Part shown: positions 1-56,143 of the stretch, one piece after another
Numbering within the stretch: position 1 is the stretch's first letter
Layout: the number at the start of each line of letters is the position of its first letter
Assembly: GCF_963921235.1 (NCBI RefSeq)
Contig: NC_086128.1
Span: forward strand, 13,268,001-13,332,000
Source: Mobula hypostoma
Taxonomy: Eukaryota
Direction: 5' to 3'
Length of the DNA stretch: 64,000 bases
Program-made: the position numbers and the translations under genes
Notes under the pieces: model-generated
What the model saw: the letters and a program-made list of their open reading frames with translations, nothing else
Told to the model about the DNA's origin: nothing
Database searches by the model: none

Positions 1-1074
1 ACATTGTTAAATCAGAGACGCAGGGTTTTCTCGGGCAGGTCCTGGTTGACAGTCTGAATTACTAATGGAGATCACTCATGCAAAAGTCCAAACTTGCTGA
101 GTGGTTCTTCCTGCAGTTATTCCCACATTGCTCCCTTGTTGGATGCCTTGTGAAGTTCAATGGAGGAGCACCAAATTCCCAATGTTTACAAGTGGGATCT
201 GCCCATTAACGTTGTATCAATCAGGCAATTTCAGTGACTACTCACTACCATGGAGACAAACAGATTCAAGGGGGAAAGGCAAGTTTCAGTTAATGTACAT
301 TAGTTTGAATTTAAATATATTTCATTCTTAACTGCACTTAAAAAAGTGAAACATCAAAAGTGATCACTGGAAGTTCCAAGAAGCTTAGACTGAAAAAGCT
401 ATTACAATTAAATTTCCTGGGGGCATACTGGAAGTACTTTGGATTGTCAATCCTCTGCCCCTAACACAAAGTTGTGCACAATGTCACATTGATTTATATT
501 AAATAATTCCGACATCTCATGTTCAACTCTGTTAAATAAGAATGCAAAAAAGAGCAATTTATATCTAGTGATTGTAATTTCATTAGCTTCAAGGTAATTG
601 TGAAGAAGGACAGTTCTGTTCCTTGGGTTGAGATTCAGAAATGGAGAAAGGCCAATTCTGAGGGCATCAGAAAGGATCAGGCAAGTGTGAATAAGGATAG
701 CTTGTTTTCTGGCAAAAGGATGCTTGGTAAGTAGAAGCATTTCAACGTGAAAATTTGAGAGTATAGAGTTTGTATGTTCCTGCTCAATTAAGAGGCAAGG
801 TTTAGGGAACCTTGGTTTTCGAAAGATATTGAAACCCTGGTTAAGAAGGAGGCACATAGTGGGTATCGACAGCAAAGAACAAATTAGGTGCTTGACGAGA
901 GTAAGAAATGCAAGAGAACACCAGCAGTGCTAAAAGAAGGCATGAGGTTGGGATAGCCGACAAGGTGAAGGAGAACCCCAAGGGCTTCGACAGGTACTTT
1001 AAGAACAAAGGATAGCAATGGAAGATCAGTGGTTCATCTATGCATGGAGCCAAAACAGATGAGGGAGAACTTAA

Positions 1075-1289
1075 GCAACACACATAAAAGTTGCTGGTGA
1101 ACGCAGCAGGCCAGGCAGCATCTCTAGGAAGAGGTACAGTTGACATTTCGGGCCGAGACCCTTCGCCAGGACTCGACGTTTCGGGCCGAGACCCTTCGTC
1201 AGGACTGCTGCCTGGCCTGCTGCGTTCACCAGCAACTTTGATGTGTGTTGCTTGAATTTCCAGCATCTGCAGACTTCCTCGTGTTTGCA
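1075..1289 (+). mobile_element. Mini fold-back Penelope-derived element with tandem hammerheads, inserted in CR1
   Basis: TSD AGGGAGAACTTAA at 1062-1074 and 1290-1302. Inverted arms at ~1075-1121 and ~1206-1251, plus a 3' tail. Confidence 0.85.
1137..1207 (-). ncRNA. Tandem pair of minimal type I hammerhead ribozyme motifs
   Basis: Two copies of the 33-bp unit GTC-CTGACGA-AGGGTCTCGGCCC-GAAA-CGTC-GA. The second core reads CTGGCGA. Confidence 0.75.
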
Positions 1290-3353
1290 AGGGAGAACTT
1301 AAAATGGATTTTTGCCTCTGTATTTACTCAGGAGATGGACACAGAGTCTATAGAACTGAGACAAAGCAAGGTCATGGACGGGGGCTGATTGGGGATAGTC
1401 AGCATGGCTTTGTGTGCAGTAGGTCATGTCTAATTAATCTTATAGATTTTTTTGAGGAGGCTACCAAGAAAGTTGATGAAGGAAAGGCAGTGGATGTTGT
1501 CTACATGGACTTTACCAAGGCTTTTATCAAAGTCCTGCATGGGAGGCTGGTCCAGAAGGTTCACTCGCTTAGTAATCAGGATGAAATAGCAAATTGGATT
1601 CAATATTGGTTTAGCAGGATTATTCAGAGAGTGGTAGTAGATGGTTACTTCGCTAACTGGAGGCCTGTGACTAGTAGTGCAGGGATTGGTGCTGGTTCTC
1701 TTGTTGTTTGTCATCGAATGGACGACATCAAGATTGGGACCGTAATGGACAATGAGGAAGGCTATCAAAGCTTACAGCAGTATCTGGACCATCAGGAAAA
1801 GTGGCTGAAAATTTAATGCAGACAAGTGTGAGGTGTTGTATTTTGTGAGGACAAGCCAGGGTAGGACATATACAGTGAACGGTAGGCCACTGAGAAGTGT
1901 GGTAGAACATAGGGATCTGGGAATACAGGTACATAATTTCTTGAAAGTGGCATTGTAGGTCGATAGGGTTGTAAAGAAAGCTTTTGGCACATTGGCCTTC
2001 ATAAATCAGATAAGTACATGTATGGTCTGGGTGCAGATCGATGGGAATAGGCAAAGTAACAGTTTGGCATGCATTAGATGGGCTGAAGGGCCTGTTTCTG
2101 TGCTGTAGTGCTCTATGAGTCTATGGTCTTTTGCATTAGCCATATGGTCCCTTGAGGATGATCAAGCTTTTAGCTTCAAGACCATTTACCTTCTGGATCC
2201 CCATCACTCTGAATTCCCCTGTACTCCTAATATTTATCTTCATCAGGCTCATGACCCAGCATTCATAGTCCTCTGAGGCGGACAAATTTCATCATCTCAA
2301 GTGGCGAATGTTTAATTCTCAGATCATGCCCCCTACATCTAGACTGTTTCATCAGGGCGCAAAATTCCAAAGCCTCTATCCCCTCAAGATCTCATGTTTC
2401 AGTGAGATCACTTTTCATTTTTTTTAATCTCAAGAGTTTTTACATTCATTTTGCTCAATCTTTTCTCATAGGCCAATTGTCTTATCCATTTGTGGGAGTC
2501 AGTCTAATCTATCTTTTCTGTACTACTACCCAGACAAGTATCCCCTTCTGTAAATAAGCAGCCTAAAATACTCCAGAGGTAGTCTAGCTAATATCCCAAA
2601 CAGTTTTAGCAAGAGTGCCTAACTCTTGTGTTTCATTCTTTTTGTAATAAAGGCACTTCCGTGCTCTGAATATTGCCTGCATACCGTCCCATGTCTGTAT
2701 GTTGTTTAAGCAGGCACCATCTGCTTCATTTGCTCCACAATAAGTTTGGTTCAATCATCTCTTTCCATACTTCAAATATACAAAAGCAAATTACTACTGA
2801 TCTAGAAATCTGAAATAGAAGTAGAAAATGCTGAAAACCCGGCAGGCCAGGCAGTGCCTGTAGTGAGGAAAACCATTTCAGATTGATGAGCTTTCATCAG
2901 GACTGGGTAAAGAAAATTAAACAGGCTTTACAATGCAGACAATAGAACAAAAAGCAAAGTAGGTGACTGGGCAAATTGTTGGAATCAGAATTAGGTTTAT
3001 TAACTGTCTTATATGATGTGAAATTTGTTTTGTGGTGGCAGTTCAATGAAGACATAAAATTGCTATAAATTACAAAATAAATAAATAACACAAAAATAAA
3101 TTAATACTGAGGTAGTATTCATGGATTCATAGACCGTTCAGAAATCTATAGTCTTTAGTCCTCAAACTCTTAATGAAGTAGAGCAATTGGAGTGCTTTGT
3201 TCGTGTTTGCATCAATATGTTGGGTCAAGGACAAATCCTCTGACATGTTGACAGCCAGAAACTTGAAGCTGCTCACTCTTTCCACCACTGACCCCTCGAT
3301 GAGGACGGGTGTGTGTTCTCCCAACTTCCCCTTCCTGAAATCCACAGTCGGTT

Positions 3354-4143
3354 CATAGAAACATAGAAACATAGAAAATAGGTGCAGGAGTAGGCCATTC
3401 GGCCCTTCGAGCCTGCACCGCCATTTATTATGATCATGGCTGATCATCCAACTCAGAACCCAGCCTTCCCTCCATACCCCGTGACCCCTGTAGCCACAAG
3501 GGCCATATCTAACTTCCTTTTAAACATAGCTAATGAACTGGCCTCAACAGTTTGCTGTGGCAGAGAATTCCACAGATTCACCACTCTCTGTGTGAAGAAG
3601 TTTTTCCTAACCTCGGTCCTAAAAGGCTTCCCCTCTATCCTCAAACTGTGACCCCTCGTTCTAGACCTCCCCAACATCGGGAACAATCTTCCCGCATCTA
3701 GCCTGTCCAATCCCTTTAGGATCTTATACGTTTCAATCAGATCCCCCCTCAATCTTCTAAATTCCAACGAGTACAAGCCCAGTTCATCCAGTCTTTCTTC
3801 ATATGAAAGACCTGCCATCCCAGGAATCAATCTGGTGAACCTTCTTTGTACTCCCTCTATGGCAAGGATGTCTTTCCTCAGATTAGGGGACCAAAACTGC
3901 ACACAATACTCCAGGTGTGGTCTCACCAAGGCCTTGTACAACTGCAGTAGTACCTCCCTGCTCCTGTACTCGAATCCTCTCGCTATAAATGCCAGCATAC
4001 CGTTCGCCTTTTTCACCGCCTGCTGTACCTGCATGCCCACTTTCAATGACTGGTGTATAATGACACCCAGGTCTCGTTGCACCTCCCCTTTTCCTAATCG
4101 GCCACCATTCAGATAATAATCTGTTTTCCTATTTTTGCCACCA
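3354..4143 (-). mobile_element. Young 5'-truncated CR1 3' end
   Basis: Uninterrupted RT C-terminal ORF (LYKALVRPHLEYCVQFWSP) and a (CATAGAAA)n tail at 3354-3378. Confidence 0.92.
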
Positions 4144-6539: not shown

Positions 6540-6650
6540 TTACCTTTTTATTCTGGCTTCTGCCTCCTACCTTTCCAGTCCTGATGAAGGGTCTCGGCCC
6601 GAAAGTCAACTGCTTATCTCCCTCCATAGATGCTACCTGTCCTGTTGAGG
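6540..6650 (+). mobile_element. Penelope pLTR fragment with hammerhead motif (6576-6612)
   Basis: CAGTC-CTGATGA-AGGGTCTCGGCCC-GAAA-GTC-AACTG, then AGATGCTACCTG. Confidence 0.7.
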
Positions 6651-9022
6651 TTGCATGTGCAGAAGCTCTTGTGTCAATGGTAATTCAGTCACTAGTTGCA
6701 CTCCCAATGGAATTAATTACTTTTACAGAAGATACCAAGCCGATAAAAGCAAAATATTTTTGATGAAATCCATCAATTCTTGATGAGGAACTACGTAGGA
6801 TAAGTATAAAATACTGCAGGTGCCAGAATTCTGAATCACCGGCACCTGGAGAGTTGGTGCATTTTTGACCAAGAGACTTAAGTTTCTAAACTTGACTGGT
6901 TTGAGACCCCAATTTCTTAGTCGCACCAGTTTCCAGGATCAACTATTTCAATGAAAAAGCACCCATTGGTAAACAGTCCAACGCAGTATGACAGAACTCA
7001 ACTCCAGATCTTGGATTTCAGTTGAATTTCAACAAGTGAACTATCCAAGGTTCCCTGATTTATAACTGATGACAGAAGCTGTGTTTGGACCTTTAAGAAA
7101 GAACTTTTATTACATTGTACATTTCATAGTACCTCAGAACTCGTGGATTACTTTTGTGTAGAAATTCTGAAGCACAGAATTGATGCTACGCAGGAAGCTT
7201 GCACCAGTTTCTTTCAGGGCAGCAGGACAATAAGTTACTTATACATGTGACTTGAAGTTGTGTGTTTAAGTGTTGCGAATCCTAAGCAGGCAACAGTTGA
7301 GCATGGTGTGGGAGCTCTTAAAGCAGCAGTTCTCATCAGAAGCAACACACACAAAATGCTGGAAGAACTTAGCAAGTCAGGCAGCATCTTTGGAAAGGAA
7401 AAGAAAGTTGACATTACAGGCCAAAACCCTTCATCGGGACCCTCATAGGGAGCCACAGCATCAAATAATGAGCCTCAAAGTGGCTAAAACAGAAAGATCA
7501 GAGAGAGGAAGTGGCAGCAAATGCCTTCTACAGATATTAGGGTATTGTGAAACTGGAGGTGAAGACCCAGGGGCCCAATTCTGATTCAGGGTCTGAAACA
7601 TCAATTTCCAGTAAGAAGGCAGTGCATGCAAACGCAGTGGCCCCTTAGGGGCCAGCCAAATGTGCTTTTTTCTTTGTAAAATTTGTTTTTTACAATCTAA
7701 AGACAAATCTACACCAAGAACTTTGGGTACTGTAAGGCTACTCCATGAGTGAGCTGCTTGCTGATCGGAGTAGTTAACTGATGGTGGTGGAGCCAGCTGA
7801 GATTTTGAAGAGGTCGGCCGGGATGTTGGAGAAGGAGCTGGCCGAGGTGTTGAAAAGGCCGGCCAGTTTGTTGAAGGATATGGTCGGGATATCAGAGGAG
7901 CCCGTCGGGATATCAAGGGACTCTGTTGGACAGTGATAATGTAAGTTGCCGCAGGCCTGTTACTCTGAACTGGTGGAGGAGCAGACGACATGGGAGCTGT
8001 GTAGCCTTGGTTGTAGCAAAAACTAGGCCACAAGCCTTGGGCTTGCCTGCTGCTACAGACCAGGTGAGAAACGCAGAAGTGCCACAGCATGGTGTCCATG
8101 CTCGGTTGGGGCCTGGCCTCTTCCACTGTTCTGTCCTCCTGTGTTCGAGCAGTGGAATGACAGGCTGAACTGCGTGCGTCTGCACACTGCCTGAAGACCG
8201 TATCATTGATTGCTAGACATTGTCGTTCAGGGTCTTGGACTATGTATGTGTTTTTTTTGAGTGAATATGCTTCTTTGCTCACTATTTTGAATGTTTGCTT
8301 GCTATTTTGGTTTTGCACCTTGGCCCCAGAGGAATACTGTCTCCTTCAACTGTATCTATGTATCGCTTGAATGACAATTAAACTTGATATGATTTGATTT
8401 TGATTTAAGCTGCCCCTTTGCTTCTTTAGATGCTACCTGACCTGCTGAGTTCTGAGTTCCTCCAGATATTTATCTTGTTTGAAGCATTAGGATAGTCAGA
8501 GATTTGCCTTCCACTTTCAACCATGGAATAAAAGTTCCTTACTTAGAAAACAATTGGTCCAGAAAAGCTCTCAAGGTAATATTAAGTGTTGACTCCCCCA
8601 TCCGTGACTGAGGTTAGGATAGACCTTCAGCTTACCTTCCCAGCCAGCTCCGTGTGTAGTTTGTGCTGCGTACGACAATGGTTTCACATTGCATGCATAC
8701 AAGTAGTGGTCACATTTCACCCGACTCTCAGCTTCAAACCTATTGTGAAGTGCATAAAGACCTTGCACTGCACAATGGAATCCCGAGGCTGTCAACTTTA
8801 CATGGGGAAGTACAGCAGTCAGTTTTTGCATAAGGACTGCAATGGGATAAAAGGGCAATACTTTGCTTCTGCTGGAGTTTATGGGTTATCAGCATTGGCC
8901 AAAGCATTAAGTGTCCTAATTTCCTTCATGTAAGAGATTGGGTTGTAAGGTTGGGTCCAATCTTGGCCGCATGTCTTCAACTATCTGTGATGAAATTTAC
9001 ATCTCTTGTACCTTGGGAAGCG

Positions 9023-11735: not shown

Positions 11736-13379
11736 TATACAATCTTATATAATCAGACAGTGTAAATTATCCCTTAGGGTAATGACCAAAAGAAGAGGTT
11801 AATGGGCATGTGAGAGAGAATAAGCTGGAGGGCTGTTGAGAAAATAATGAGAGGGAAAAGGAGATTAACAGGAGACACCATGGACCTAATGGGACAAATG
11901 GACTCCTTCTATGTTGCATTAAGTAAATAATGTTAGCCCTTTGCTCCCTTTTGGTTGGATTGTCACATGGTAAAAGCTGAACAAACAATTTGGAATGTAT
12001 CTGTTAGCTTCAGCACCTGACACAGCCCATTTACAGTAGGTGATCAGCATCTATAATATTCATTCAAATTGAATGTGGCTTGTCACTTCTCAGAACTTTC
12101 AAAGTGTTTGAGAGATAGTTTCAGTAATTATAATGATATCATAAAGACAGAAATAAGGAATCTTAACGATTTCAGTTTTAAATATTGAACAAAGAAAACT
12201 GTCATTTTCAGAAATAGAGGGAATTTCCTGATTACCATAACAAGATTCTCCATTCCTTTGGATCACACTGGATGTCGCCTATGGTTCTGGTCTACACTGA
12301 GAGATATTATTTGACTGTCTTGTTCTGTTTGGAAGCAATGAAGTACCAGTGTCTATCCTTCTTGTTACCTTTCATTAAACAGTGGATGTTGAATAATGCC
12401 AAAGAATTATGCTAAGAAACTGATGACAGCACTTTAATGGATATTACCTTTTGAGCTGAGGCAAGTTTGCAAGGGATTTGTACCTGCCGCCACCCACATG
12501 CTGAATTTGTGATCTATGAAAACAGATCTTGCTCTACTGAATGTCGACAAGCACCAGAGGTAAAGCAGTTCCTACATGAGGGAAAGAAAGAGAAGAAGCC
12601 TTGGTTGTTCTCCTGCAGTTCCTCATGGCCCAATACACAGCAGCACTGGACCCAGCCTTCTAACTCAATCAACGGTCTGCTCCCTGATGTACACTGGCTC
12701 CCTGACACTTAAGCCTCAGTTTATGATTCTCGTGCTCCTGCTTAACTTGCTCCATGTCCTTGCATCCTCCCTTCACAGTTAATGCCCAAGTTCGAAAACG
12801 CAAGGCTGCAATTGACCAGCAAACTAGATAAAATCTGTCCAAATGGCCGCACATCCCTGATCTTTTTGGCAGAGCTGTGATTGTCCACAAACAGACCCAT
12901 ACCCTAGAAAAAGGTAAGGAAATCACCCCAACCATTTGATATTACTATAATAAATACCAGTCTTTATGAAATGGTATTTGTTCCAAGAAGGACAGGTCAT
13001 TCTTCCATGTTTAACCATTCCCAAAAAAAAAACAGGTATTCTCTAAAGTACATTTGAAAAATTTAGTCATTTTCAGGATCTGGGTGTCTCTGGAGAGGGA
13101 GTTCCAGGCTTGGACCCAATGACAGTGAAGGACCAGTGATACTTCCAAGTTAGGATGGTGTGCAACTTGGGGAGAAGTTTACAGGTGGTGGTGTTCCCCT
13201 ATACCTTGCTGCCCTTGTCCTGCTGCCTTCATTCTTCTGATGAGTCCCGATGAAGCACCTTGGCCCAAAATGTTGACTATTTATTCATGTCCATAGATGC
13301 TGCCTGACCTGCTGAGTTCCTCCAGCATTTTGTGTGTGTTACCCTGGACTTCTAGCATCTGCAGAATCTCTTGTGGTTA

Positions 13380-20034: not shown

Positions 20035-20172
20035 CAGGACTGATGAAGGGTCTCGGCCTGAAATATCGACTGTTTATTCCCCTCCGTAGACACTGCCTGA
20101 CCTGCCGAGTTCCTCCAGAATTTTGTGTGTGTTGTTCAAGATTTCCAGCATCTGTAGAATTGCTTGTGTTTC
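20035..20172 (+). mobile_element. Penelope pLTR 3' fragment with hammerhead core, in an aqp14 intron
   Basis: CTGATGAAGGGTCTCGGCCTGAAATATCGACTG...TTCCAGCATCTGTAG tail. Confidence 0.7.
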
Positions 20173-24302: not shown

Positions 24303-25129
24303 CTAAGGCAAACACAGACAATGTCACCATGGAAATCCTTCTCTGCTTTTAGATTTTGTTTCCTTGCAATCTTCATTTATGGGATAGTCACATGTACTGG
24401 TTGGACAATTCCTACCTAATGGATTATTACAAATCAGGCCGATTTGGTCTCTGCCTGTATTTAAACTCCACAGAGTCTGCCTCACCTCATCTCATCAAGT
24501 TTGCCTCTCATTCTAATCCAGCTTCTCATTTAAAAGCAAACAGAGGTCAGATGATCTTCTCTGTGCCATTTTCCTCAGTTCCCTTAACATCCATCCTGAT
24601 GGCTTTCGCACTCTTTGCTAACATCATATAGAACACTTCTGCCCCAACACTAGTTTGCCCCACCTACTCACTCACAAGTCAAACCCAACCTCTGTCTTTC
24701 CCAAAAGAATGACTTGGTTTCTGGTGAGAACAGACTTCTTCACCAAATGTGCATTTATATGTCTCAGGTGGAGTCTGCAGGTGTTACTAGAAGAACCCAG
24801 TGCTGCCTTGTGATTCCCTGTTCTGCCCTCTTCCTTTCCAGTCCCGATGAAGGGTCTTGGCCCGAAATGTCGACTGTTTCTTTCCCTCCATAGGTGCTCC
24901 CTGACCTGTTGAGTTCCTTAAGCATTTTGTTTGTTCCGTATGAATTTCCCAAAGACTCCAGCTGTTTTCCATAGATTTCCATATTGAAATATCCCTCAGA
25001 CTGGTGTTTTTTGTTTACCCATTCATGGGACGTGATATTGTTGCTTCATTTTGCCCCATCTTCTTTCTATCCTGCTCTCCACAGACAGGTTTAGACTGGG
25101 TACACAGAGAGAAGCTGCTCTCATTAATG

Positions 25130-33744: not shown

Positions 33745-36001
33745 GATACACATTATATCGAAAGGAGAGGCAGGTAGGTGGGGGGGGGGGCGCGTGGCTC
33801 TGTTTGTAAAAACAAAATTTAATCTAATCCTTAGAAAGAGCTGACATAGGATCAGAAGGTATTGAATCATTGTGGATAGAGTTAAGGAACTGCAATGGTA
33901 AAAAGGCTCTGATGGGAGTTATACACAGGCCTCTGAACAGTAGCTAAAATGTGGGCTACAGATTACAGCAGGAGATAGAAAATGCATGTCAAAAGTGCAA
34001 TGTTACAATAGTCATGGGAGATTTCAATATGCAGGTAGATTGGGAAAATTAGTTTGGTGTTGGTTCCCAAGAGAGAGAATTTGTAGAGCGCCTATGAGAT
34101 GGCTTTTTAGAGCAGCTTGTGGTTGAGTCCACTAGGAGAACAGCAATTCCAGATAGGATGTTGTGTAATGAACCAGATTTGATTAGGAAGCTTAAAGTAA
34201 AGGAACCCTTAGGAAGCAATGATCATAATATGATAGAATTCACCCTGCAGTTTGAGAGGGAGAAGATAACGTCAGATGTATCACTATTACAGTGGAGTAA
34301 AGAGAATTACAGAGGCATGAGAGAGAAGCTGGCTAAAGTTGTTTGGAAGGGGTCACTGGCAGGGATGACGGCAGAACAGCAGTGGCTGGAGTTTCTGGGG
34401 GCAATTTGGAAAATGCAGGATATATAAATCCCAAAGATGAAGAAGTATTCTAAAGGAAGGATGTGGCAACCTTCGCTGATAAGGGAGGTCAAAGACAGCA
34501 TAAAAGCAAAAGAGAGGGCATATAATATAGCAAAAATTAGTGGGAAGGTAGAGAATTTGGAAGCTTTTAAAAACTACCAGGTGGCAACTAAAAAGCCATA
34601 AAGACAGAAAAGATGGAATATGAAGGTAAGCTAGCTAATAATATTAAAAGGGATACCAAATGTTTCTTCGGATATATAAAGAGTAAAAGAGAGGCAAGAG
34701 TACTGCAAGAAAATGATGCTGGAGAAGTAGTAATGGGGACAAGGAAATGGCGGAGGATCTTCATAAATATTTTGCATCAGTCTTCACTGTGGAAGGCGCT
34801 AGCAGAATGCCAAAATGTGAGTGTCAGTGGCAGAAGTGAGTGTCACTGCTATTATTAAGGAGAAGGTGCTCGAGAAGCTGAAAGGTTTGAAGGTAGATAA
34901 GTCAGCTGGACCAGATAGATTACACCCCAGGGTTCTGAAAGAGGTAGCAGAAGAGATTGTGAAGGCATCAGAAATGATCTTTCAAGAATCACTTGATTCT
35001 GGCATGATTCCGGAGGACTGGAAAATTGCTAATGTCACTCCACTCTTCAAGAAGGGAGGGAGGCAGAAAAAGGAAATTACAGTATATAGGCCTGTTAGCC
35101 TGACGTCAGTGGTTGGGAAGATATTGAAGTCTATTATTAAGGATGAGGTTTCGGGTACTTGGAGACACATGATAAGATAGACCAAAGTCAGTATGGTTGT
35201 CTTTAGGGGAAATGTTGCCTGACAAATCTGTTGAAATTCTTTGAGGAAATAACAGGCAGGATAGACAAAATGGATGTTGTTTATTTGGATTTTCAGAAGG
35301 CCTTTGCCAAGGTGCCACACATGAGGCTGCTTAAAAAGATATGAGCCCATGGTATTACAGGAAAGATACCAGCGTGGATAGAGCATTGGCTGATTGGCAG
35401 GAGGCAAAGAGTGGGAATAAAGGGAGCCTTTTCCGGTTAGCTGGCGGTGACTAGTTGTGTGCCAAAGGGGTCGTTGTTGAGATCCTTTCTTTTCACATTG
35501 CATGTCAATGATTTGGGTGAAGGTATTGATGGCTTTGTAGCCAAGTTTACAGATGATACTAAGATAGGTGGAGGGGCAGGGAGTGTTGAAGCAGCAGGGT
35601 ATCTGCAGAAGGATTTAGACAGATTAGGAGAATTGGCAAAGAAATGGCAGATGGAATACAATGCAGGGAAGTGTACGGTCATGCACTTCAGCAGAAGGAA
35701 TAAAGGCATAGACTATTTTCTAAGTGGGGAGAAAAGTCAAAAGTCAGAGCTGCAGAGGGACTTGGGAGTCCTTGTGTAGAATTCCCTAAAGGTTAATTTG
35801 CAGGTTCAGTTGGTAGTAAGGAAGGCAAATGTGATGTTAGCATTCATTTCAAGAGGACTAGAATACAAAACCAAGGATGTAATGCTGAGGCTTTGTAAGG
35901 CATTGGTCAGACCACACTTAGAATATAGTGAGCCGTTTTGGGCCTCTCATCTAAGAAAAGATGTGGTGGCTTGGAGAGGGTCCAGAGGAGGTTATTAAGA
36001 A

Positions 36002-38319
36002 AACACTCATAACATGCTGGAGGAACTCAGCAGGTCAGGCAGCATCCGTGGAAAAGATTGGTCGATGTTTCGGGCTGGAACCCTTCGTCAGGACTGTAGA
36101 GGGAAGGGGCAGAGTCCCTATAAAGAAGGTGGGGGGAGGGTGGGAAGGATGGTAGGTTCCAGGTGAAAAACCAGTAAGGGGAAAGATAAAGGGGTGGAGG
36201 AGGGGAAGCAGGGAGGTGATAGGCAGGAAAGGTGAAGGAGGAATAGGGGAAAACACAATGGGTAGTAGAAGGAGGCGGAACCATGAGGGAGGTGGTAGGC
36301 AGCTGGGGGAGGGGCAGAGTGACATAGGGATAGGGGAAGGGAGGGGAAGGGAATTACCGGAAGTTGGAGAATTCTATGTTCATACCAAAGGGCTGGAGAC
36401 TATCTAGACGGTATATGAGGTGTTGCTCCTCCAACCTGAGTTTAGCCTCATCATGGCAGTAGAGGAGGCCATGTATGGACATATCTGAATGGGAATGTGA
36501 AGCAGAGTTGAAGTGGATGGCTACTGGGAGATCCTGTCTGTTGTGGCGGACGGAGTGGAGGTGCTCGACGAAGCGGTCCCCCAACCTGCGTCGGGTTTCA
36601 CCGATGTAGAGGAGGCTGCGCCTGGAGCACCGGATGCAATAGATGACCCCAACAGACTCACAAGTGAAGTGTTGCCTCACCTGGAAGTACTGTTTGGGGC
36701 CCTGAATGGTGGCAAGAGAGGAGGTGTAGGGACAGGTGTAGCACTAACGCTTACAGGGATAAGTGCCAGATGGGAGATCCATGGGGAGGGACGTGTGGAC
36801 CAGGGAGTCGCGGAGGGACCGATCCCTGCGGAAGGTGGAGAGGGGTGGAGAGGGAAAGATGTGCTTAGTGGTGGGGTCCTGTTGAAGGTGGCGGAAGTTG
36901 CGGAGGATAATGTGCTAGATCCGGAGGCTGGTGGGGTGGTAGGTGAGGACAAGGGGAGCTCTGTCCCTGTTGTGGTGGCGGGAGGATGGGGTGAGAGCCG
37001 AAGTGTGGGAAATGGAGGAGATGTGGGTGAGGGCATCATTGATGACAGCAGAAGGGAAACAATGATCCCTGAAGAAAGAGGACTTTTGAGATGTCCTGGA
37101 ACGGAAAACCTCATCCTCGGAGCAGATGCGGCGGAGACGGAGGAAGTGGGAATAGGGAATGGCATTTTTGCATGTGGTGGGGTGGGAAGAGGTATAGTCG
37201 AAGTAGTTATGAGAGTCAGTGGGCTTGTAGAAGATGTCAGTGGACAGTCTGTCTCCAGGGATGGAGACCGAGAGATCGAGAAAGAAGAGAGAAGTGTCCG
37301 AGATAGACTAAGTGAATTTGAGGGCTGGGTGGAAGTTAGAAGTAAAGTCGATGAAATTGACGAGCTCAGCATGGGTGCAGGAAGCAGCACCAATGTAGTC
37401 GTCAATGTAGTGAAGGAAGAGTTGGGGAGCAGTACCAGAATAGGTTTGGAGCACCGACTGTTCCACATAACCAACGAAGAGGCAGGCATAGCTAGGGCCC
37501 ATGCGAGTTCCCATAGCTACACCCTTGGTCTGAAGAAAGTGGGAAGAGCCAAAAGAGAAGTTATTGAGTGTGAGAACCAGTTCCGCCAACCGGAGGAGGG
37601 TAGTGGTGGTGGGAAATTGGTGAGGTCTATTATCCAGAAAGTAGCGGAGGGCTTTGAGGCCTTCTTCATGGGGGATGAAACCCGACGCAGATTGGGGGAT
37701 CGCTTCGTCGAGCACCTCCGCTCCGTCCGCCAAAACAGACAGGATCTCCCAGTAGCCACCCACTTCAACTCTGCTTCCCACTCCCATTCAGATATTTCCA
37801 TACATGGCCTCCTCTACTGCCATGATGAGGCTAAACTCAGGTTGGAGGAGCAAAACCTCATATACCGTCTAGGTAGTCTCCAGCCCCTTGGTATGAACAT
37901 AGAATTCTCCAACTTCCGGTAATTCCCTCCCCCTCCCTTCCCCTATCCCAGTTTCACTCTGCCCCCTCCCCCAGCTGCCTACCACCTCCCTCATGGTTCC
38001 GCCTCCTTCTACTACCCATTGTGTTTTTCCCTATTCCTTCTTCACCTTTCCTGCCTATCACCTCCCTGCTTCCCCCCCCCTCACCCCTTTATCTTTCCCC
38101 TTACTGGTTTTTCACCTGGAACCTACCAGCCTTCTCCTTCCCACCCTCCCCCCACCTTCTTTATAGGGCCTCTGCCCCTTCCCTCTACAGTCCTGATGAA
38201 GGGTTCCGGCCCAAAATATCGACTGATCGTTTCCACGGATGCTGCCCGACCTGCTGAGTTCCTCCAGCGTGTTGTGAGTGTTTGCTCTGACCCCAGCATC
38301 TGCAGATTATTTTGTGTTT
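36002..38319. mobile_element. Penelope-like element: inverted RT/GIY-YIG/pLTR segment plus forward GIY-YIG end/pLTR, nested in CR1
   Basis: TSD GAGGTTATTAAGAA at 35988-36001 and 38320-38333. Minus strand encodes GVAMGTRMGPSYA, YIDD and VIYCIRC..LLYIGETRRRLGDRFVEH, with an in-frame TAG at 37308-37310. Inverted arms are ~600 bp. Confidence 0.92.
36061..36094 (-). ncRNA. Minimal hammerhead motif in the Penelope pLTR
   Basis: GTC-CTGACGA-AGGGTTCCAGCCC-GAAA-CATC-GAC. Confidence 0.7.
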
Positions 38320-38974
38320 GAGGTTATTAAGAATGACCCCAGGAATGAAAGGGTTAACATATGAGGTGCATTTGATAGCTCTGGGCCTGTACTCACTGGA
38401 GTTTATAAGAATGTGGGGAATCTCATTGCAACCTAGTTAATATTGAAAGGCCTCGATAAAGTGGATATGGAGAAAATGTTTCTACAGAGGGGGAGTCTAG
38501 GACCAGAGGGCACAGCCTCAGAATTGAGGGATGTCCATTTAGAACATTCTTTAGCCAGAGGGTAGTGGAAAAATTTCTTTAGCCAAAGGGTAGTGAATCT
38601 GTGGAATTCTTTGCCACAGATGGCTTTGCAGGCCAAGTTACTGGTTACATTTAAAGTGGAGGTTGATAGGTTGTTGATTAGTGAGGATGTCAAAGGTTAC
38701 TGGAAGAATGCAGGAAAATGGGTTTGAGAGGGATGATAAATCAGCTATGATGAAATGACGGTGCAGACTTGATGGGCCGAATGGTCTTATGGTAAGCCAT
38801 TGGTGAAGATATGAATGTTGAGCTTTGCTGCGCAGTATTATAGAGTTGTTAGGCATACTATGAGGCTACTTGGCCCATCGAGTTCATGCCAGCTCCAAGT
38901 AGAGCAACCCTACTAGTCCCATTCCTTGCCCTTTTCCCTTGACATTGCAAAGTGTCTATGCACTTCCCTTTTCA

Positions 38975-41352: not shown

Positions 41353-42346
41353 TGGTAATGTGCAGAGTTCAGTTCTTTTCAGTCTCCTCAAAAAGCAGAG
41401 GTATTCCAATGACTATTCCTTGAATTTTTGGTGTCAGTATAAATTAGGTTGCAAGTGACACCACTTTGAATCTCTCAGCTGGATTTTGGCATTGCCGATG
41501 AGACCAGCATTCATTACCTATCACTAACGATATTTGAACTGAATGGGTCAAAAAAAAAATCCACTGAAGGAACTCGGTGAGTCAGACAGCATTTTGGAGG
41601 GAAATGGACAGTCAACATTTCAGGTCAAACCCCTTTATCTAGCCTGAAAGATAAGAGAGGGAGATGGCTGAAATGTCAACAGTCCATTTCTCTCCACAGA
41701 TGCTCTCTGACCTGCTGAGTTCCTCCGGTAGTTTATTTTTGCTCCAAATTCCAGCCTCTCCTGTGTCTGCATTGAACTGAATGGCTTTCTGGACCATTTC
41801 AGGAGGCAGATAAGAGTCACCGTCATTGGTGGGTGTGGAGTCACAAATAGCCCAGAAGAAAGAAGGATGGCAGGTTACCTTCCCTGAAAGACACTAGCAT
41901 ATCAGTTTTTTTTTTAATGATAATTAGATTAAGGCTCCTGATTATTATTACTATTATTATTATTGAGCCATGGTTACTTGAGCATAATAGGAGGAAGATA
42001 TTGAACTCTGTCTTCAGTATGGAGATTGAATGGTGGCCAATTGAATCAGAATGTTTTTTCAAATGGAGACTTCTCTGTAGTCTTTTGTTTATAGTTGTAC
42101 AATTCTGACAACTCGTGCCGGGTGGAAATGAGCCACCTTTATGACACTCGGAGAAAAGGATCGAATTTCCCTGCGCCCTCACTGTCCATGGGTCGGGGGG
42201 GCGGGGGGGGGGATGTCAGCAAACTGTTGGTTAAGGGCAAGGGTCAAAGGATAGGAATAGAAACACAATGTGCATAGCATCAAAAAATAACTGGGTACAC
42301 AGATTTCTTTCACTCCGCAGTTTTCTGAAGTATTACTGATCGTCGC

Positions 42347-45400: not shown

Positions 45401-48400
45401 GTGCTGACAGAAAAAAAAAGTCTGGTGGGGAGAAAACTGGGAGGAAAATATAACATTGAGAAGAAGGCTGGGATAGGTGGGGGTGGGAGGTGTGGAATGA
45501 AGTGATGAGTGAGTGGGGGAGAAATGCTTTGTTCCTCGGGAGCTCTCATACATTTTCAATATTATGCTTGTTCTCCAGATAATTACTCATGAATATGTTT
45601 ATTTGAAGATGGTTTCCACAGAAAGCCTGTTCCCTCTCTCTATGCCTTGGTTTAATTTATTATTGGATTAACATCTGTTTCTGTCATGAACCACTTATCA
45701 GAGACAGGAAAAGCAGAAGGGAGCAGCACGTGTTCCAGACACACAGCAAATACTGATCCACTTTTCTCAACCACCTTTTCTTACTTCAGAAATCATAGAA
45801 ACCCAAGCACGTTTCACAGCCTTAAAACTGAAATCAGCCTCTGTGATCTGTGTAATGTTTTTCATCCATACAACCTGTAGTTCTCTGCACAGATTTGCAC
45901 TTGATAGCAAAGACCTTTGTATTTGAGCTGCTCCTTATGATCTGCATGATATCATTCTGGATTCTCTGCTGATCTCAGACCAAAACTCTCTAACAGTGCT
46001 TCCCTCCGCAGATTTGCACTGCTCACACCAACGTCTCTGTAAACTCTCCCATCCTGACAAGCTCTCTAGATGGTACAGCATTGGAACTGGTTTATTATTG
46101 TCCCATGTACCAAGATACAGTGAAAATCTTGTCCTGCAATCTGTTTCTACAAATCAAATCATTACACAGTGCATTGAGGTAGAATAAGGTAAAACAATAA
46201 CAATACAGAATAAAGTGTAAAAACTACCGAAAGAGTGCAGTGCAGGTAGACAATAAAGTGCAAGATCATAACGAGGTAGATTATGAGGCAAAGAGCCCAT
46301 CTTATCGTATCAGAGGTCAGTTCAAGAGTCTGATAACAGTGGGGTGGAAGCTGCCCATGAGCCTGGTGGTACATGTTTTTAGGTTTTTGTATCGTGTGCC
46401 TGGTGGGGGAGTGGAGACTAGAGAATGTCTGGGGTGTTTGAGATCTTTGATTAGGCTGGCTGCTTTACTGAGACAGTGAGTAGTACAGACTGAGTTTATA
46501 GAGGGGAGGCTGGTTCCTGCAACGTGCTGAGCTGTGTCCACATCTCTCTGCTGTTTCTTGTGGTCACAGGCAGGCCGTTATGCATCCAGATGGAATGCTT
46601 TCTATGGTGCAGGAGGTTGAGCAGCCTAGGACAGGGAGACACAGTTTGAGAATAAGGGGTAGCCATCTAGGGCTGAGATGAGGAGAAATGTATTCATTCA
46701 GCGAGAGATGAACCTTCAGAGTTCTCCACCCTGGAGGCTCAGTCATCAAGTCCTGTAATCAGCGAGCCCTGGGGTCAATCTCGAAGCCCAAAGGATGAAG
46801 ATCAAAGTTGGTGTGTCTGGAAGCCAGAGGCCAGATGATTGAGACTCCTGGGAGTTGGAGACCTGAGATCTGTGAGTTTGGGCCAGAGACTGGCACTTGG
46901 AGACCTGGAGGTGGCCTGTCCTGGGTTTGGAGATGAGGGGAGGGAAGGGGAGATGGGGGGAGGGGAGACAGGGGGGGGACAGGGAGGGGGGAGATGGGGA
47001 GGGGGAAAGGAGACTTGTTTTGCTGTTGTTGTTTTGGTGTTGCTGTGTTATTCTTGCTTGAATTGTTTTACTTGATATGGGTATGCTATGTTGGTGCTGT
47101 AATGTGTGGCAACACTTGTGGGCTATCCCCAGCATATCGTTAGGTTGTGTTGGCTGTCAAAACGAATGATGTATTTCACTGCATGTTTCAATGTACATGT
47201 GATAAATAAATGAATATAAATGTTCATTCAAATCCAGAATTCAATGGATTTCTGGGCATTAAGGGAGTCAACAGATGTGGGGATAGTGCAGGAAGATGGT
47301 GCTGAGGTAGAAGATCAGCCACGATTTTAATGTACAATGAAGAAGCCTCAAAGGAACGGATGTTCTGCTCCTCTTCCTGTTTCTTATGTTTTCTTCCAAT
47401 TTTAACCCTTTCACTATTACAGCCAGCTGCTTGGGACCCAAGCTTTGGAATTTTGCCCCCTATACCTCCCAAACCTCCCCACCTCATTTTCCTGCTTTAA
47501 GATGCTCTTTGAAATTGACTGACAACTAAACTTTATGTTATCAGTCTTGAAATTTAAGGGTGTTTCATGAAGTGAATTTTTTTTTGTGTGTGTGACTCTA
47601 GCCCAGTTTAATGCCTTGGGACATGTAACGTCAAAATTTAGATTGCATTCTGCCTCTTAAACAAAGTAATGTTTAAAATGGATACTCAGGGTCCCAGTCT
47701 GGGAGTTGTGGTGCAGGCTAAGCAGCTCTCACTGCCGTACACTGCAAGCAAGGTTCTCGTCAAAACACAAATTCCTGCTCACTGTGTGAGAGCTGGAATC
47801 ACTTCATGACCCGATTGAAGTAAAAACTGTGTGGAAAATGCATGGATAGCGGTGTAGAAGTGGGTGGGGGGGAAGCTGGATCTTCAAGGGGGAAGAGGGA
47901 ATCTGGGACTGGTACTTTTGAGCTTCAGAAGGATTGATCACCTAACAATTGTGGCAATCAAAACACACAACACCGGAAACACTCAGCAGGTCAGGCAGTA
48001 TCTGGGGAGAGAATCTTACTGCCAACTGTTTCTCTCTCCACAGACGCTGCCTGGCCTGTTAAATATTCCCAGCACCCTGAAACATAATAATCTCAGCTTC
48101 TTTTCTCTGCTGCACTCTTTTCATTTCCCTCATCCTTTTCTCCACCTCGACCATCCATTCAGCCATCTCTTCCTTCCCTCGGTCACCAGTCCAAACTTCC
48201 CCTAGGTCACCTCTTTCCCTGAACCTCATCTGGTCACCTGCCTTCATCCCTTATAGCTCACCTTGGCAACAAATTCCATCTTCTGCTTCCCTGACACTAA
48301 ATTAGTGATTGAGAAACTTCCTGCCATCGAACCAGCTCTCGACCCTTTTGTCCCTGTAAACTACTCCTCCTTCTCCAACCAACCTTTTCTTTCTAAAAAA

Positions 48401-48779
48401 ATCGTGAGTAGGCTGTTGCCTCTCAGATCCGGAACTTGTTCAGGTTTCAATTTGTGCAATAATACAAACATGAACATTTTCAATGTTACAAATAATTCTT
48501 TATGTGAATGCGACAATAGTAAATATTTTGTGATGCCTTGTTATTGTCATACAGCTGGGTGGGTCTCCAATCACATGGTTCTATTTTTATCTCTTCAGTC
48601 ACAGTCCAAAAATCATCTGCAAAACACAAACTGCTGGAAGAACTCAGCAGGTCAGGCAGCCTCCATGGATCTGAACAGTCAACGTTTTGGGGTGAGACCC
48701 TTCTTCAGGACATCTACAATAGCTTGTCTTTCCACACCAGAACCACTCATGTACAAATCGAACACCACTTTTCATTGCT

Positions 48780-51957: not shown

Positions 51958-51963
51958 TTTATT
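51958..51963 (-). terminator. Candidate polyA signal (AATAAA) of the troap-like gene
   Basis: Minus-strand AATAAA about 1.2 kb after the stop, at the end of a TE-free AT-rich stretch. Confidence 0.35.
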
Positions 51964-53966: not shown

Positions 53967-54431
53967 CTGAAGGTCAGAATGGACAGGTTTTAAAATTCAC
54001 AGTGCAGCTTCAGTAGTATTCTACTGGAGTCTTTTGGTGACAATATATCCAAGTCAAACATAATTTACTCTCTCCAAGAGTTCTCTAATCAACACTTGCC
54101 TTTACGCTTTCCAAAAGTGGAATGAGTAACTATTTCTAAATTGCATTCAACAGGTTTCACAATTCACAAGTATGGGATTAAACAACAGTTATTCATTGAT
54201 TCACGATCAGGGTAGAAGGTGGAAGTGTTACGGGTTGGAAACTCCACTCCAGGACTCAACCTAGGCCAACACTGGGTGTATTTTAGCTATTCCTCTTCTG
54301 TTACACATTGTGCCAAATCACCACTGTATACACAAACAACAGGAATTCTGCAAATGCTGGAAATTCAAGCAACACACATCAAAGTTGCTGGTGAACGCAG
54401 CAGGCCAAGCAGCATCTATAGGAAGAGGCGC

Positions 54432-54467
54432 AGTCGACGTTTCAGGCCGAGACCCTTCGTCAGGACT
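54432..54467 (-). ncRNA. Minimal hammerhead motif, intact core
   Basis: AGTC-CTGACGA-AGGGTCTCGGCCT-GAAA-CGTC-GACT. Confidence 0.8.
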
Positions 54468-55185
54468 AACTGAAGGAAGAGTGAGTAAGGGATTTGAAAG
54501 CTGGAGGGGGAGGGGGAGATGCAAAATGATAGGAGAAGACAGGAGGGGGAGGGATAGAGCCGAGAGCTGGACAGGTGATTGGCAAAAGGGGATACGAGAG
54601 GATCATGGGACAGGAGGTCCGGGAAGAAAGACAGGCGGGGGGGGGGGGTGACCCAGAGGATGGGCAAGAGGTATATTCAGAGGGACAGAGGGAGAAAAAG
54701 GAGAGTGAGAGAAAGAATGTGTGCATAAAAATAAGTAACAGATGGGGTACGAGGGGGAGGTGGGGCCTTAGCGGAAGTTAGAGAAGTCAATGTTCATGCC
54801 ATCAGGTTGGAGGCTACCCAGACGGAATATAAGGTGTTGTTCCTCCAACCTGATGGCATGAACATTGACTTCTCTAACTTCCGCTAAGGCCCCACCTCCT
54901 CCTCGTACCCCATCTGTTACTCATTTTTATGCACACATTCTTTCTCTCACTCTCCTTTTTCTCCCTCTGTCCCTCTGAATATACCTCTTGCCCATCCTCT
55001 GGGTCACCCCCCCCCCGCCTGTCTTTCTTCCCGGACCTCCTGTCCCATGATCCTCTCGTATCCCCTTTTGCCTATCACCTGTCCAGCTCTCGGCTCTATC
55101 CCTCCCCCTCCTGTCTTCTCCTATCATTTTGCATCTCCCCCTCCCCCTCCAGCTTTCAAATCCCTTACTCACTCTTCCTTCAGTT

Positions 55186-55221
55186 AGTCCTGACGAAGGG
55201 TCTCGGCCTGAAACGTCGACT
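55186..55221 (+). ncRNA. Minimal hammerhead motif, intact core (predicted cleavage after C55217)
   Basis: Stem I AGTC/GACT, CTGACGA, stem II AGG/CCT, GAAA, palindromic ACGT, GTC cleavage triplet. Confidence 0.8.
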
Positions 55222-56143
55222 GCGCCTCTTCCTATAGATGCTGCTTGGCCTGCTGCGTTCACCAGCAACTTTGATGTGTGTCACCACTGTATACACAAGT
55301 CTTTCATTGATGTATTTTCAGACATGGACAATGACATACAATAAAATGCTATACAAGTGCCAGACCTTTCTTTTCTAAAAGAAAGTTTTTTTCCCTGTAC
55401 TGTATTAATTCCAGTCACCTGCAGGGATTTTTTTTTTTACTCCTCCTGTGCTGAGAATGACTATCCCTAATTTTTGCTGTATGCTTTTAATTCAGTGATC
55501 AAACAAAGATTCAAATCACATAGAGGTGCCGTGCATTTTAGTTCAAATTGGAGATTGTAAATCCTGGCAAAATGATGGATTTTACAGAGTGATTTATTCA
55601 ATACCATGTAGAACTCAAAGTCATTTTGCAATTCTAATAGTTATTCACAGAATTGAAACATTCTCACTAGCTTTATAACCAACTAATAAATAAAAGGACG
55701 GAGTTTTAACAGCATAAGCCATTTCATTTAAATTCTAATTTTAAAAGGATATGGAAGGCAGGTGTAGAAAGAAAAGGGGAATAGATCTAATCAATGAAGG
55801 CACATAAGGCCATAAATAAGGAGGCCGCTGTCTATCTTAACGCCATAGCAATTCCCAAGCTCTCAATATATCAGAATATTGCTTCAGACACCCATCCTTC
55901 TAAAAAAGTGTCACAATATAAATAAACAAAGATAGGTAGCCAGTTGGATGTTGACCTGGAGCCATACAGGCGTGTGCCAATCTGAAAATTTAACAATGGA
56001 AATTAACCTTAATTAACAGTAATTACCATTCTGTGGTTTTTACAAAGGGACATGCCAGATTGAACATAGCTACACTTCTGGAGAAGATTCCACTTTAATA
56101 GAACTGTAAAACAGTTCTGCACCTTAACATACAAGTAGCTCAC

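What the first reader, a model, noticed from the sequence alone, without database searches (positions are those of the whole stretch)
1062..55298. Family of hammerhead-bearing fold-back Penelope insertions sharing a fixed ~37-nt unpaired tail
Seen: three independent insertions (1075-1289, 36002-38319, 54336-55280) have 13, 14 and 18-bp TSDs. Each is an inverted repeat whose inverted arm stops at nearly the same pLTR position (..AACACAC / AACACTC), leaving a tail of about 36-38 nt (..CCAGCATCTGCAGA..GTGTTT) on one side only. Older decayed hairpin versions occur at ~41560-41760 and ~47960-48080, and about a dozen hammerhead motifs are scattered over 64 kb. Known: Penelope-like elements have pLTRs, inverted 5' segments, a short 3' tail and minimal hammerheads. 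Inference: a stereotyped two-step priming mechanism, apparently recently active, yields a size series from RT-containing copies down to 215-bp non-coding ribozyme hairpins. These may be an uncharacterised non-autonomous, retrozyme-like family in elasmobranchs.
Basis: partly seen in the sequence, partly recalled or inferred. Interest (0 to 1): 0.8.

Follow-up and report, generated by a model that had tools for sequence, protein, structure and literature searches.

The report
Penelope-like retrotransposon fold-back insertions in ray
These are real but ordinary insertions of a very abundant Penelope-like jumping gene in a ray genome; their inverted-pair shape, one-sided 37-base tail and small hammerhead motif are published hallmarks of this element class, not signs of a new ribozyme-based mobile family.

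Summary
E1 (1075-1289), E2 (36002-38319) and E3 (54336-55280) are single insertions flanked by perfect 13, 14 and 18 bp target duplications. Each has an inverted arm that stops at ..GTGTGTT(GC) and a direct arm that runs 33-38 nt further. A fourth fold-back (41547-41771, 13-bp duplication) and a decayed fifth (~47959-48075) follow the same plan.

E2 keeps a broken RT plus a GIY-YIG endonuclease with the CCHH and CX3CxxC motifs, so the element is a Neptune-type Penelope-like element (PLE).

About 15 hammerhead sites occur in the window, and 6 have an intact catalytic core. Rfam models match none of them.

Everything structural is already published: the one-sided 30-40 bp tail, the adjacent inverted 5'-truncated copy and the minimal hammerheads (Craig 2021, Cervera 2014). 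Frangieh 2024 showed two RT start sites that define the tail, and showed that both DNA strands are cut and extended.

The "retrozyme-like non-autonomous family" reading is not supported. All five fold-backs have different junctions. Other genomic copies diverge exactly at E1's junctions. There are no tandem arrays.

This scan has noted the same thing many times elsewhere in this genome.

Two small extras: 5' ends cluster at the hammerhead's 5' edge, and tail-less ends occur only on inverted arms.

The parts
1062..1074 (.). E1 target-site duplication, left copy (agggagaacttaa)
   Evidence: identical to 1290-1302
1075..1173 (-). E1 inverted arm, tail-less. Sense runs from the hammerhead 5' edge (AGTCC) to ..GTGTGTTGC. 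Its hammerhead core carries A6->G (CTGGCGA).
1174..1206 (-). E1 extra 33-nt hammerhead piece (sense AGTCCTGACGAAGGG..GAAACGTCG) with an intact core. It spans from the hammerhead 5' edge to the predicted cleavage site plus 1 nt.
   Evidence: (TRF period 33, 2 copies, 93% match)
1207..1251 (+). E1 direct arm, the last 45 nt of the pLTR
1252..1289 (+). E1 tail, 38 nt (ttgaatttccagcatctgcagacttcctcgtgtttgca)
   Evidence: hundreds of other genomic copies end at 1286-1288 (loose ends)
1290..1302 (.). E1 target-site duplication, right copy
35988..36001 (.). E2 target-site duplication, left copy (gaggttattaagaa)
36002..37680 (-). E2 inverted arm, tail-less, 1.68 kb. It carries the RT C-terminal half, a CX3CxxC linker and a GIY-YIG/CCHH endonuclease in one frame of 444 codons with 3 in-frame stops, then the pLTR with an intact-core hammerhead at 36068-36091.
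37681..38282 (+). E2 direct arm, 602 nt. It holds the endonuclease C-terminus and the pLTR; its hammerhead has G12->A.
38283..38319 (+). E2 tail, 37 nt
38320..38333 (.). E2 target-site duplication, right copy
54318..54335 (.). E3 target-site duplication, left copy (tcaccactgtatacacaa)
54336..54372 (-). E3 tail, on the left because the element lies in minus orientation
54373..54841 (-). E3 tail-bearing arm, with an intact-core hammerhead at 54440-54463. It ends in the element's own palindrome aggttggagg / cctccaacct (54805-54851), where the turn-around lies.
54842..55280 (+). E3 tail-less arm, with an intact-core hammerhead at 55190-55213
55281..55298 (.). E3 target-site duplication, right copy
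41547..41771 (+). Older 225-bp fold-back. Both arms reach the hammerhead 5' edge and the tail is on the right only. It is flanked by the 13-bp TSD ttgaactgaatgg (41534-41546 / 41772-41784).
47959..48075 (.). Old, decayed short fold-back with arms of about 40-45 nt. Its TSD is no longer clear.
20036..20171 (+). Solo 136-bp unit running from the hammerhead 5' edge to the tail end, with an intact core
13225..13378 (+). Solo 5'-truncated copy with a tail
6542..6675 (+). Solo copy with an intact-core hammerhead (6581-6604), an internal deletion and the second half of the tail
7336..7440 (-). Solo unit that starts at the hammerhead 5' edge. Its tail status is ambiguous.
24800..24950 (+). Solo copy with a decayed tail
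27729..27940 (+). Solo copy with a 'short tail': GTTGC is joined directly to AGAGTCTCTTG
48606..48711 (-). Solo unit that starts at the hammerhead 5' edge, with a 'short tail' (TTTGC|AGATGATTTTTGG)

Best explanation
The window holds many dead copies of a very abundant Neptune-type Penelope-like retrotransposon.

Proposed mechanism for each fold-back, as the product of one integration event:
1. The element's GIY-YIG endonuclease makes staggered cuts 13-18 bp apart in both target strands.
2. Each 3' end primes reverse transcription of element RNA.
3. Synthesis starts not at the RNA's end but at one of two fixed, similar internal sites (template ..GUGUGUUGC and ..GUGUUUGC, 37-38 nt apart).
4. One cDNA therefore carries the 'tail' and the other does not.
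5. Both cDNAs stop wherever synthesis aborts or the RNA ends, and are then joined 3' end to 3' end. The join uses template jump or microhomology; in E3 it lies at a natural 10-12-nt palindrome.
6. The result is an inverted repeat inside one target duplication.

Arm length, and hence junction position, differs from event to event. That gives the size series from 2.3 kb down to 215 bp. The products are dead on arrival.

Shown here: the anatomy, the TSDs, the fixed end points, the variable junctions, the protein domains and the abundance. Inferred: the order of steps and the enzymology, by analogy with the in vitro work on an Anolis Poseidon element.
For: Anatomy and TSDs. Empty-site validation.

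Element identity:
- GIY-YIG hit above the Pfam cutoff and a weak RVT_1 hit.
- Two Cys between GIY and YIG (VIYCIRC..YIGET) plus a CX3CxxC linker. These are the PLE endonuclease and Neptune/Nematis hallmarks of PMC8557442.

Fixed end points:
- Fixed 3' ends in ~20 arms.
- Hundreds of other genomic contigs in three species end at 1286-1288 and continue into diverse AT-rich flanks.
- The tail-less end occurs in 5 of 5 fold-backs, always on exactly one arm, but in at most 1 of 8 solo copies (Fisher p about 0.005, my calculation).

Variable junctions: five different junctions in five fold-backs. Many other low-count fold-back joints appear genome-wide (table 5).

Literature:
- One-sided 30-40 bp tail and adjacent inverted 5'-truncated copy.
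- Two RT start sites that equal the tail, both strands cleaved and extended, AT-rich targets.
- Minimal dimer-type hammerheads in pLTRs.
Against: - The biochemical model comes from a Poseidon-clade lizard element, not this family.
- In vitro, no strand difference in start-site choice was seen. Here the tail-less site is confined to the inverted arm.
- Rfam hammerhead models do not match, and cleavage activity is untested.
- One 85-nt contig (X1 record 5; about 90% identity, depth about 13) appears to cross an E1-like junction. An earlier scan note claims that a similar hairpin was re-copied. So some re-copying of hairpins is not excluded.
- E2's arms differ by 5%. That fits ageing, but two different template RNAs cannot be ruled out.
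Confidence: 0.85

Rival explanations
1. The short hairpins (E1, the 41.6-kb copy) are members of a self-propagating non-autonomous lineage. They would be transcribed from the pLTR and mobilised as units in trans by the PLE enzyme, in a retrozyme-like or SINE-like manner.
For: - The size class of about 215-245 bp recurs: E1, the 41547-41771 copy, and a 242-bp case in earlier scan note s1-141886.
- One diverged contig seems to share an E1-type junction (record 5).
- Seven arms start at one position, the hammerhead 5' edge, which points to a discrete RNA species.
- PLE-derived non-autonomous elements exist in other taxa.
Against: - E1 and the 41.6-kb hairpin have different junctions.
- 326 and 181 X1 contigs leave E1 exactly at 1173 and 1206, and depth dips in the two junction bins.
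- There are no tandem arrays.
- Only one polarity of hammerhead occurs per transcript, except for E1's 33-nt pair, one member of which has a mutated core.
- A copy that ends at the tail lacks the ~20+ nt of downstream RNA needed by the studied PLE.
- A recurrent junction is also expected without replication, if both cDNAs simply run off the same short RNA.
Confidence: 0.1
2. The palindromes arose at the DNA level after a simple insertion (hairpin-mediated duplication or inversion, or gene conversion), or are long-read assembly artefacts.
For: E3's arms are nearly identical (99.3%). The literature warns that PLE structures confuse assemblies.
Against: - The TSDs flank the whole fold-back, not one arm.
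- The same one-sided tail asymmetry is seen in at least four of the five fold-backs, at ages from 0.7% to over 20% arm divergence.
- E2's arms are 5% diverged and unequal in length (1683 vs 639 nt).
- The flanks are unique or paralog-validated.
Confidence: 0.03

Closest known systems
Canonical EN+ Penelope-like elements (Neptune clade; also Penelope/Poseidon), as described by Arkhipova 2006 and Craig et al. 2021 (PMC8557442)
   Same: - RT followed by a C-terminal GIY-YIG endonuclease with CCHH, plus a CX2-5CxxC linker.
- Heavy 5' truncation.
- An adjacent inverted 5'-truncated copy.
- A 30-40 bp tail at one end only.
- Variable-length TSDs.
- A hammerhead in the pLTR.
   Different: Nothing structural. 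This is a ray-specific, extremely abundant family: about 20 arms in 64 kb, and 92,812 matching contigs in one run. No full-length or tandem copy is present in the window.
PAc (Anolis Poseidon) in vitro system, Frangieh et al. 2024 (PMC11167929)
   Same: - Two adjacent internal RT start sites whose spacing equals the genomic tail.
- The priming site is not homologous to the target.
- Both target strands are cut and extended.
- AT-rich targets.
- A hammerhead about 85-100 nt upstream of the start sites.
   Different: A different clade. In vitro, no strand bias of start site was reported, whereas here the tail-less start is confined to the inverted arm. The ray element has not been tested biochemically.
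L1 twin priming (inversion/truncation insertions; Ostertag and Kazazian 2001, cited from my own knowledge)
   Same: The second target strand also primes on the element RNA. The two cDNAs are joined by microhomology inside one TSD.
   Different: In L1 the second primer anneals at a random internal position, which gives an inversion of a different segment. Here both primings start at fixed 3'-proximal sites, which gives an inverted repeat of the same segment.
Metazoan non-LTR retrozymes (Cervera and de la Pena 2020, PMC7229834; Li et al. 2026 preprint 10.64898/2026.07.22.740005)
   Same: Small, non-coding, PLE-related and hammerhead-bearing. Reported in one chondrichthyan as well.
   Different: Retrozymes are direct tandem repeats of 150-450 bp units with canonical type I hammerheads, and are expressed as circRNAs. 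The elements here are inverted pairs with minimal dimer-type hammerheads and no arrays.

Membership tests
Penelope-like element (canonical C-terminal EN+) | GIY-YIG endonuclease C-terminal to the RT | tested here: met
   PF01541 scores 27.4 bits against a cutoff of 22.6 on 36354-36680(-). It lies in the same frame downstream of the RT remnant.
Penelope-like element (canonical C-terminal EN+) | CCHH motif with two Cys between GIY and YIG | tested here: met
   The sequence reads ..GVIYCIRCSRRSLLYIGET..VEHLHSV..HFNSASH. The criterion comes from PMC8557442.
Penelope-like element (canonical C-terminal EN+) | PLE/TERT-type reverse transcriptase | tested here: inconclusive
   Only the C-terminal half is present. 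RVT_1 scores 20.8 bits, below the cutoff of 29.6. A YIDD motif is present. No phylogeny was done.
Penelope-like element (canonical C-terminal EN+) | [quoted passage not shown] | tested here: met
   Tails of 38, 37 and 33-37 nt lie on one side in E1, E2 and E3, and also in the 41.6-kb copy.
Penelope-like element (canonical C-terminal EN+) | Adjacent inverted 5'-truncated copy and variable-length TSD | tested here: met
   The TSDs measure 13, 14, 18 and 13 bp.
Neptune clade (as against Penelope/Poseidon) | CX2-5CxxC Zn-finger linker upstream of the endonuclease | tested here: met
   The motif is C-K-R-(stop)-C-Y-T-C, upstream of the GIY motif. Nematis was not excluded, and no tree was built.
Hammerhead ribozyme, minimal type I (PLE min-HHR) | Conserved core CUGANGA...GAAA with H17, short helix I, and helix II with an unpaired 5' nucleotide | tested here: met
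   Six sites qualify. Helix I is AGUC/GACU, helix II is GGGU/GCCU closed by CUCG, and there is an extra A. This matches the descriptor in PMC4209133.
Hammerhead ribozyme, minimal type I (PLE min-HHR) | Match to curated hammerhead covariance models | tested here: not met
   No Rfam hammerhead hit at the gathering score or at E<=10. Helix III is only the palindrome ACGU, so it can pair only in a dimer.
Hammerhead ribozyme, minimal type I (PLE min-HHR) | Self-cleavage | not testable with these tools
   Only assembled contigs were available. The monomer's lowest-energy fold sequesters the core.
Metazoan non-LTR retrozyme | Direct tandem repeats of hammerhead-bearing units of 150-450 bp | tested here: not met
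   TRF finds only a 33-nt x2 repeat inside E1. All paired copies are inverted.
Metazoan non-LTR retrozyme | Expression as self-cleaved circular RNAs | not testable with these tools
   All runs were kept as contigs and none is confirmed as RNA.

The most novel reading that the evidence does not exclude
The short units and hairpins may be run-off cDNAs of a discrete short RNA. That RNA would start at an initiator-like CCAGTCC / TTAGTCC at the hammerhead's 5' edge.

E1's extra 33-nt piece runs exactly from that start to the predicted hammerhead cleavage site. It could therefore be a fossil of a template jump onto the 32-nt 5' cleavage product. If such junctions recur genome-wide, genomic insertions would give the first in vivo record that PLE hammerheads cleave. 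They would also show where PLE transcription starts.

A weaker variant is that some hairpins are re-mobilised as units.
Probability: 0.2. Interest if true: 0.55.

Novelty: new member of a known kind. Interest (0 to 1): 0.2.

Why it matters
Mostly for annotation. These fold-backs, one-sided tails and scattered hammerhead motifs are the normal debris of a hugely successful Penelope-like element in this ray. They should be masked as such, not flagged as new ribozyme elements, microRNA-like hairpins or retrozymes.

They also give natural, in-genome support from a second PLE clade for the two-start-site model, which has so far been shown in vitro for one lizard element. They add two testable details: the tail-less start is tied to the inverted arm, and 5' ends cluster at the hammerhead edge.

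Tried and rejected
- Rfam at gathering score and at E<=10. There were no hammerhead hits, and the only hits were spurious miRNA-like matches to the E3 palindrome.
- Protein homologue search with the endonuclease remnant. It returned only 14 short hits, including stingray gene models that have exonised a PLE fragment. Their DNA could not be fetched, so no independent loci from other batoids were obtained.
- Metagenome scan for the conserved pLTR core: zero matches.
- Folding of the single-arm 3' ends. They are no more stable than shuffles (z between -1.3 and +1.0), so there is no evidence here for a strong autonomous RNA structure. E1 as a whole folds as a near-perfect hairpin (z = -13.4), but that follows from its being an inverted repeat.
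- Summed contig depth cannot be used as a copy number. It could not settle whether E1's junction recurs, because only the best-supported joints and loose ends are listed.
- Whether E1 or E3 is absent from sister species was not resolved.
- Spliced-exon origin of the common 5' end: rejected, because the copies share no upstream sequence.
- Hammerhead-cleaved RNA as the source of the common 5' end: rejected, because cleavage lies about 32 nt downstream of that point.

Full report
**1. What is there**

- E1, 1075-1289: agggagaacttaa at 1062-1074 and 1290-1302.
- E2, 36002-38319: gaggttattaagaa at 35988-36001 and 38320-38333.
- E3, 54336-55280: tcaccactgtatacacaa at 54318-54335 and 55281-55298.

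Two checks confirm these are insertions. Removing E2 and one repeat copy restores an uninterrupted LINE reading frame. That frame aligns without a gap across the junction to a paralogous LINE at 3400-4300(-) in the same window. For E1, contigs from paralogous copies of the host repeat skip 1069-1308 (joints table).

**2. Anatomy of each fold-back**

Each element consists of two copies of the 3' end of one retroelement, in opposite orientation.

| Element | Arms | Arm identity |
|---|---|---|
| E3 | about 440-510 nt each | 99.3% |
| E2 | 1683 nt (inverted) and 639 nt (direct) | 94.8%; 31 mismatches, 22 of them transitions |
| E1 | 99-nt inverted arm + extra inverted 33-nt piece + 83-nt direct arm | 1 mismatch in 45 nt |

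In every case one arm ends at ..GTGTGTT(GC). The other runs on for 38, 37 or 33-37 nt (ttgaatttccagcatctgcaga...gtgttt). E3 lies in minus orientation, so its tail is on the left.

A fourth fold-back at 41547-41771 has its own 13-bp target duplication (ttgaactgaatgg) and the same asymmetry. A fifth, at about 47959-48075, is too decayed to score fully.

The window holds about 20 arms in all. The rest are solo 3' fragments of 90-210 bp, at 6542, 7440, 8429, 13225, 20036, 24800, 27729 and 48711, plus a more distant family at about 2858.

**3. Identity of the element**

E2's inverted arm reads in a single frame for 444 codons with three in-frame stops. In order it contains:
- an RT remnant with YIDD (RVT_1, weak);
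- a C-x3-C-x2-C linker;
- a GIY-YIG domain (Pfam 27.4 bits, cutoff 22.6) with two cysteines between GIY and YIG.

Craig et al. 2021 give the internal CCHH motif as the hallmark of PLE endonucleases. They give the CX2-5CxxC linker as present in Neptune/Nematis and absent in Penelope/Poseidon. I therefore file the element as a Neptune-type Penelope-like element. No phylogeny was done.

**4. Hammerheads**

About 300 nt after the stop codon each arm carries AGUC-CUGACGA-A-GGGUCUCGGCCY-GAAA-CGUC|GACU. This has:
- the hammerhead core;
- a 4-bp helix I;
- a 4-bp helix II with an unpaired 5' A;
- in place of helix III, only the palindrome ACGU.

That is the minimal, dimer-dependent type described for PLEs.

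Six sites keep the core: 1179-1202(-), 6581(+), 20040(+), 36068-36091(-), 54440-54463(-) and 55190(+). About nine more are mutated, mostly by CpG-type changes. No Rfam hammerhead model matches, even at E<=10. As a monomer the RNA prefers a rod that buries the core. Activity is untested.

**5. Abundance and end points outside the window**

Logan contigs of four runs from three coded organisms were laid on 850-1500.
- In one run 92,812 contigs matched, almost all within 1075-1289. The flanks are low-copy or belong to another repeat.
- Hundreds of contigs per run end their match at 1286-1288 and continue into diverse, T/A-rich sequence. So the tail end is a fixed family boundary with AT-rich targets.
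- Depth does not drop between the pLTR core and the tail, so most copies carry the tail.
- Contigs leave E1 exactly at its two internal junctions: 326 at 1173 and 181 at 1206 in X1, with the continuation expected of ordinary copies. The two bins containing those junctions are the shallowest in the element.
- The listed joints include several other fold-back junctions (1110>1216, 1110>1229, 1123>1244, 1160>1247, 1163>1230 and others), each seen in only one to three contigs per run.
- One 85-nt contig (record 5) at about 90% identity seems to cross an E1-type junction.

**6. Comparison with the literature**

- Craig et al. 2021 describe, as standard PLE features, heavy 5' truncation and an inverted 5'-truncated copy adjacent to the unit. 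They also describe a 30-40-bp tail present at only one end.
- Cervera and de la Pena 2014 describe the minimal hammerheads in pLTRs and their massive genomic spread.
- Frangieh et al. 2024 worked with purified Anolis Poseidon protein. They showed that both target strands are cut and extended. They showed that reverse transcription starts at two adjacent internal sites not homologous to the target, and that the genomic tail is the interval between those sites. Targets were AT-rich. The RNA had to extend beyond the distal start site to act as a template.
- Here the two start sites can be read from the cDNA 5' ends, GCAACACAC and (T)GCAAACAC. They are two similar motifs 37-38 nt apart.

**7. Why this is not a new retrozyme-like family**

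- Retrozymes are direct tandem arrays of 150-450-bp units with canonical type I hammerheads, and they yield circRNAs. A 2026 preprint already links them to PLE pLTRs and finds them in a chondrichthyan.
- This window has no such array. The paired copies are inverted, so a transcript carries only one sense hammerhead.
- E1's minus strand is the exception, with two hammerheads 33 nt apart, one of which has a mutated core.
- The five fold-backs have five different junctions.
- Copies that end at the tail lack the downstream RNA needed as a template in the only system studied.
- I leave about 10% for some hairpins being re-copied, because of contig record 5 and an unverified earlier scan note.

**8. 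Details that go slightly beyond the literature I could read**

(a) The tail-less end is found on exactly one arm of all five fold-backs. At most one of eight solo copies has it (Fisher p about 0.005, small sample). So the proximal start site seems tied to the second, inverted priming. In vitro, no strand bias was reported.

(b) Seven arms begin within 4 nt of the hammerhead's 5' edge, (A)GTCC: both E1 units, 7440, 48711, 20040 and both arms of the 41.6-kb hairpin. The preceding bases (CCAGTCC, TTAGTCC) fit an initiator consensus. A simple reading is that these are run-off cDNAs of an RNA that starts there. The RT start sites lie only about 100 and 135 nt downstream. 'Double run-off' would then produce hairpins of about 225-245 bp with a recurrent junction and without any replication of the hairpin itself.

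(c) E1's extra 33-nt piece spans exactly that 5' edge to the predicted cleavage site plus 1 nt. It differs from its neighbour at 3 of 33 positions. It could be a template jump onto the hammerhead's 5' cleavage product, or just a tandem duplication. It is a single case.

(d) E3's turn-around lies in a natural 10-12-nt palindrome in the endonuclease coding end, which fits joining by 3'-end annealing. E2's junction has at most 3 nt of microhomology.

**9. Verdict**

These are ordinary dead-on-arrival insertions of a known element class, a new member of a known kind. 406 notes mention Penelope and hammerhead, and two followed-up cases reached the same conclusion. I treated those notes as leads only.

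Noticed in passing
window 1075-1206, 7336-7440, 20036-20171, 41547-41771, 48606-48711: Seven pLTR arms start within 4 nt of the hammerhead's 5' edge, (A)GTCC. The preceding bases (CCAGTCC, TTAGTCC) resemble an initiator. This suggests a discrete RNA 5' end (a transcription start) and run-off cDNAs of only about 100-135 nt.
   Followed up: partly
window 1174-1206: The 33-nt extra hammerhead piece in E1 runs exactly from that 5' edge to the predicted hammerhead cleavage site plus 1 nt. It differs from the adjacent copy at 3 positions. It may be a template jump onto a cleaved RNA fragment, or a simple tandem duplication.
   Followed up: partly
window 27876-27940(+) and 48606-48663(-): Two old copies have a 'short tail'. 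The tail-less end GTTGC is joined directly to the last ~15 nt of the tail (AGAGTCTCTTG.. / AGATGATTTTTGG..), skipping about 20 nt between two GC dinucleotides.
   Followed up: no
window 1115-1125 with 1261-1270; 38236-38246 with 38293-38302; also E3 and 13296: The tail motif CAGCATCT is the reverse complement of pLTR AGATGCTG about 60 nt upstream, so the pair brackets the tail-less RT start site. The differences in E2, E3 and the 13296 copy keep pairing as G-U wobbles. There are too few sequences to test covariation.
   Followed up: no
window 54805-54851: The E3 turn-around coincides with a natural palindrome (aggttggagg ... cctccaacct) in the endonuclease coding end of this subfamily. Rfam's only 'hits' in the window are spurious plant miRNA models on this palindrome.
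   Followed up: yes
window 3453-4223(-), 35798-36001 with 38334-38560, 59615-60307(-): LINE reverse-transcriptase C-terminal remnants (..LVRPHLEY..LGLYSLEFRR..). E2 is inserted inside one of them.
   Followed up: partly
window 2790-2910(-): A more divergent pLTR-like copy with CTGATGA..GAAA but a non-pairing helix II. It is probably an older or different PLE family.
   Followed up: no
proteins P0008 and P0014: Stingray gene models (an ATP synthase subunit C3-like isoform in Hypanus sabinus and a VKORC1L1 isoform in Hemitrygon akajei) include 89-95% identical PLE endonuclease fragments. These are probably exonised or mis-annotated PLE pieces.
   Followed up: no
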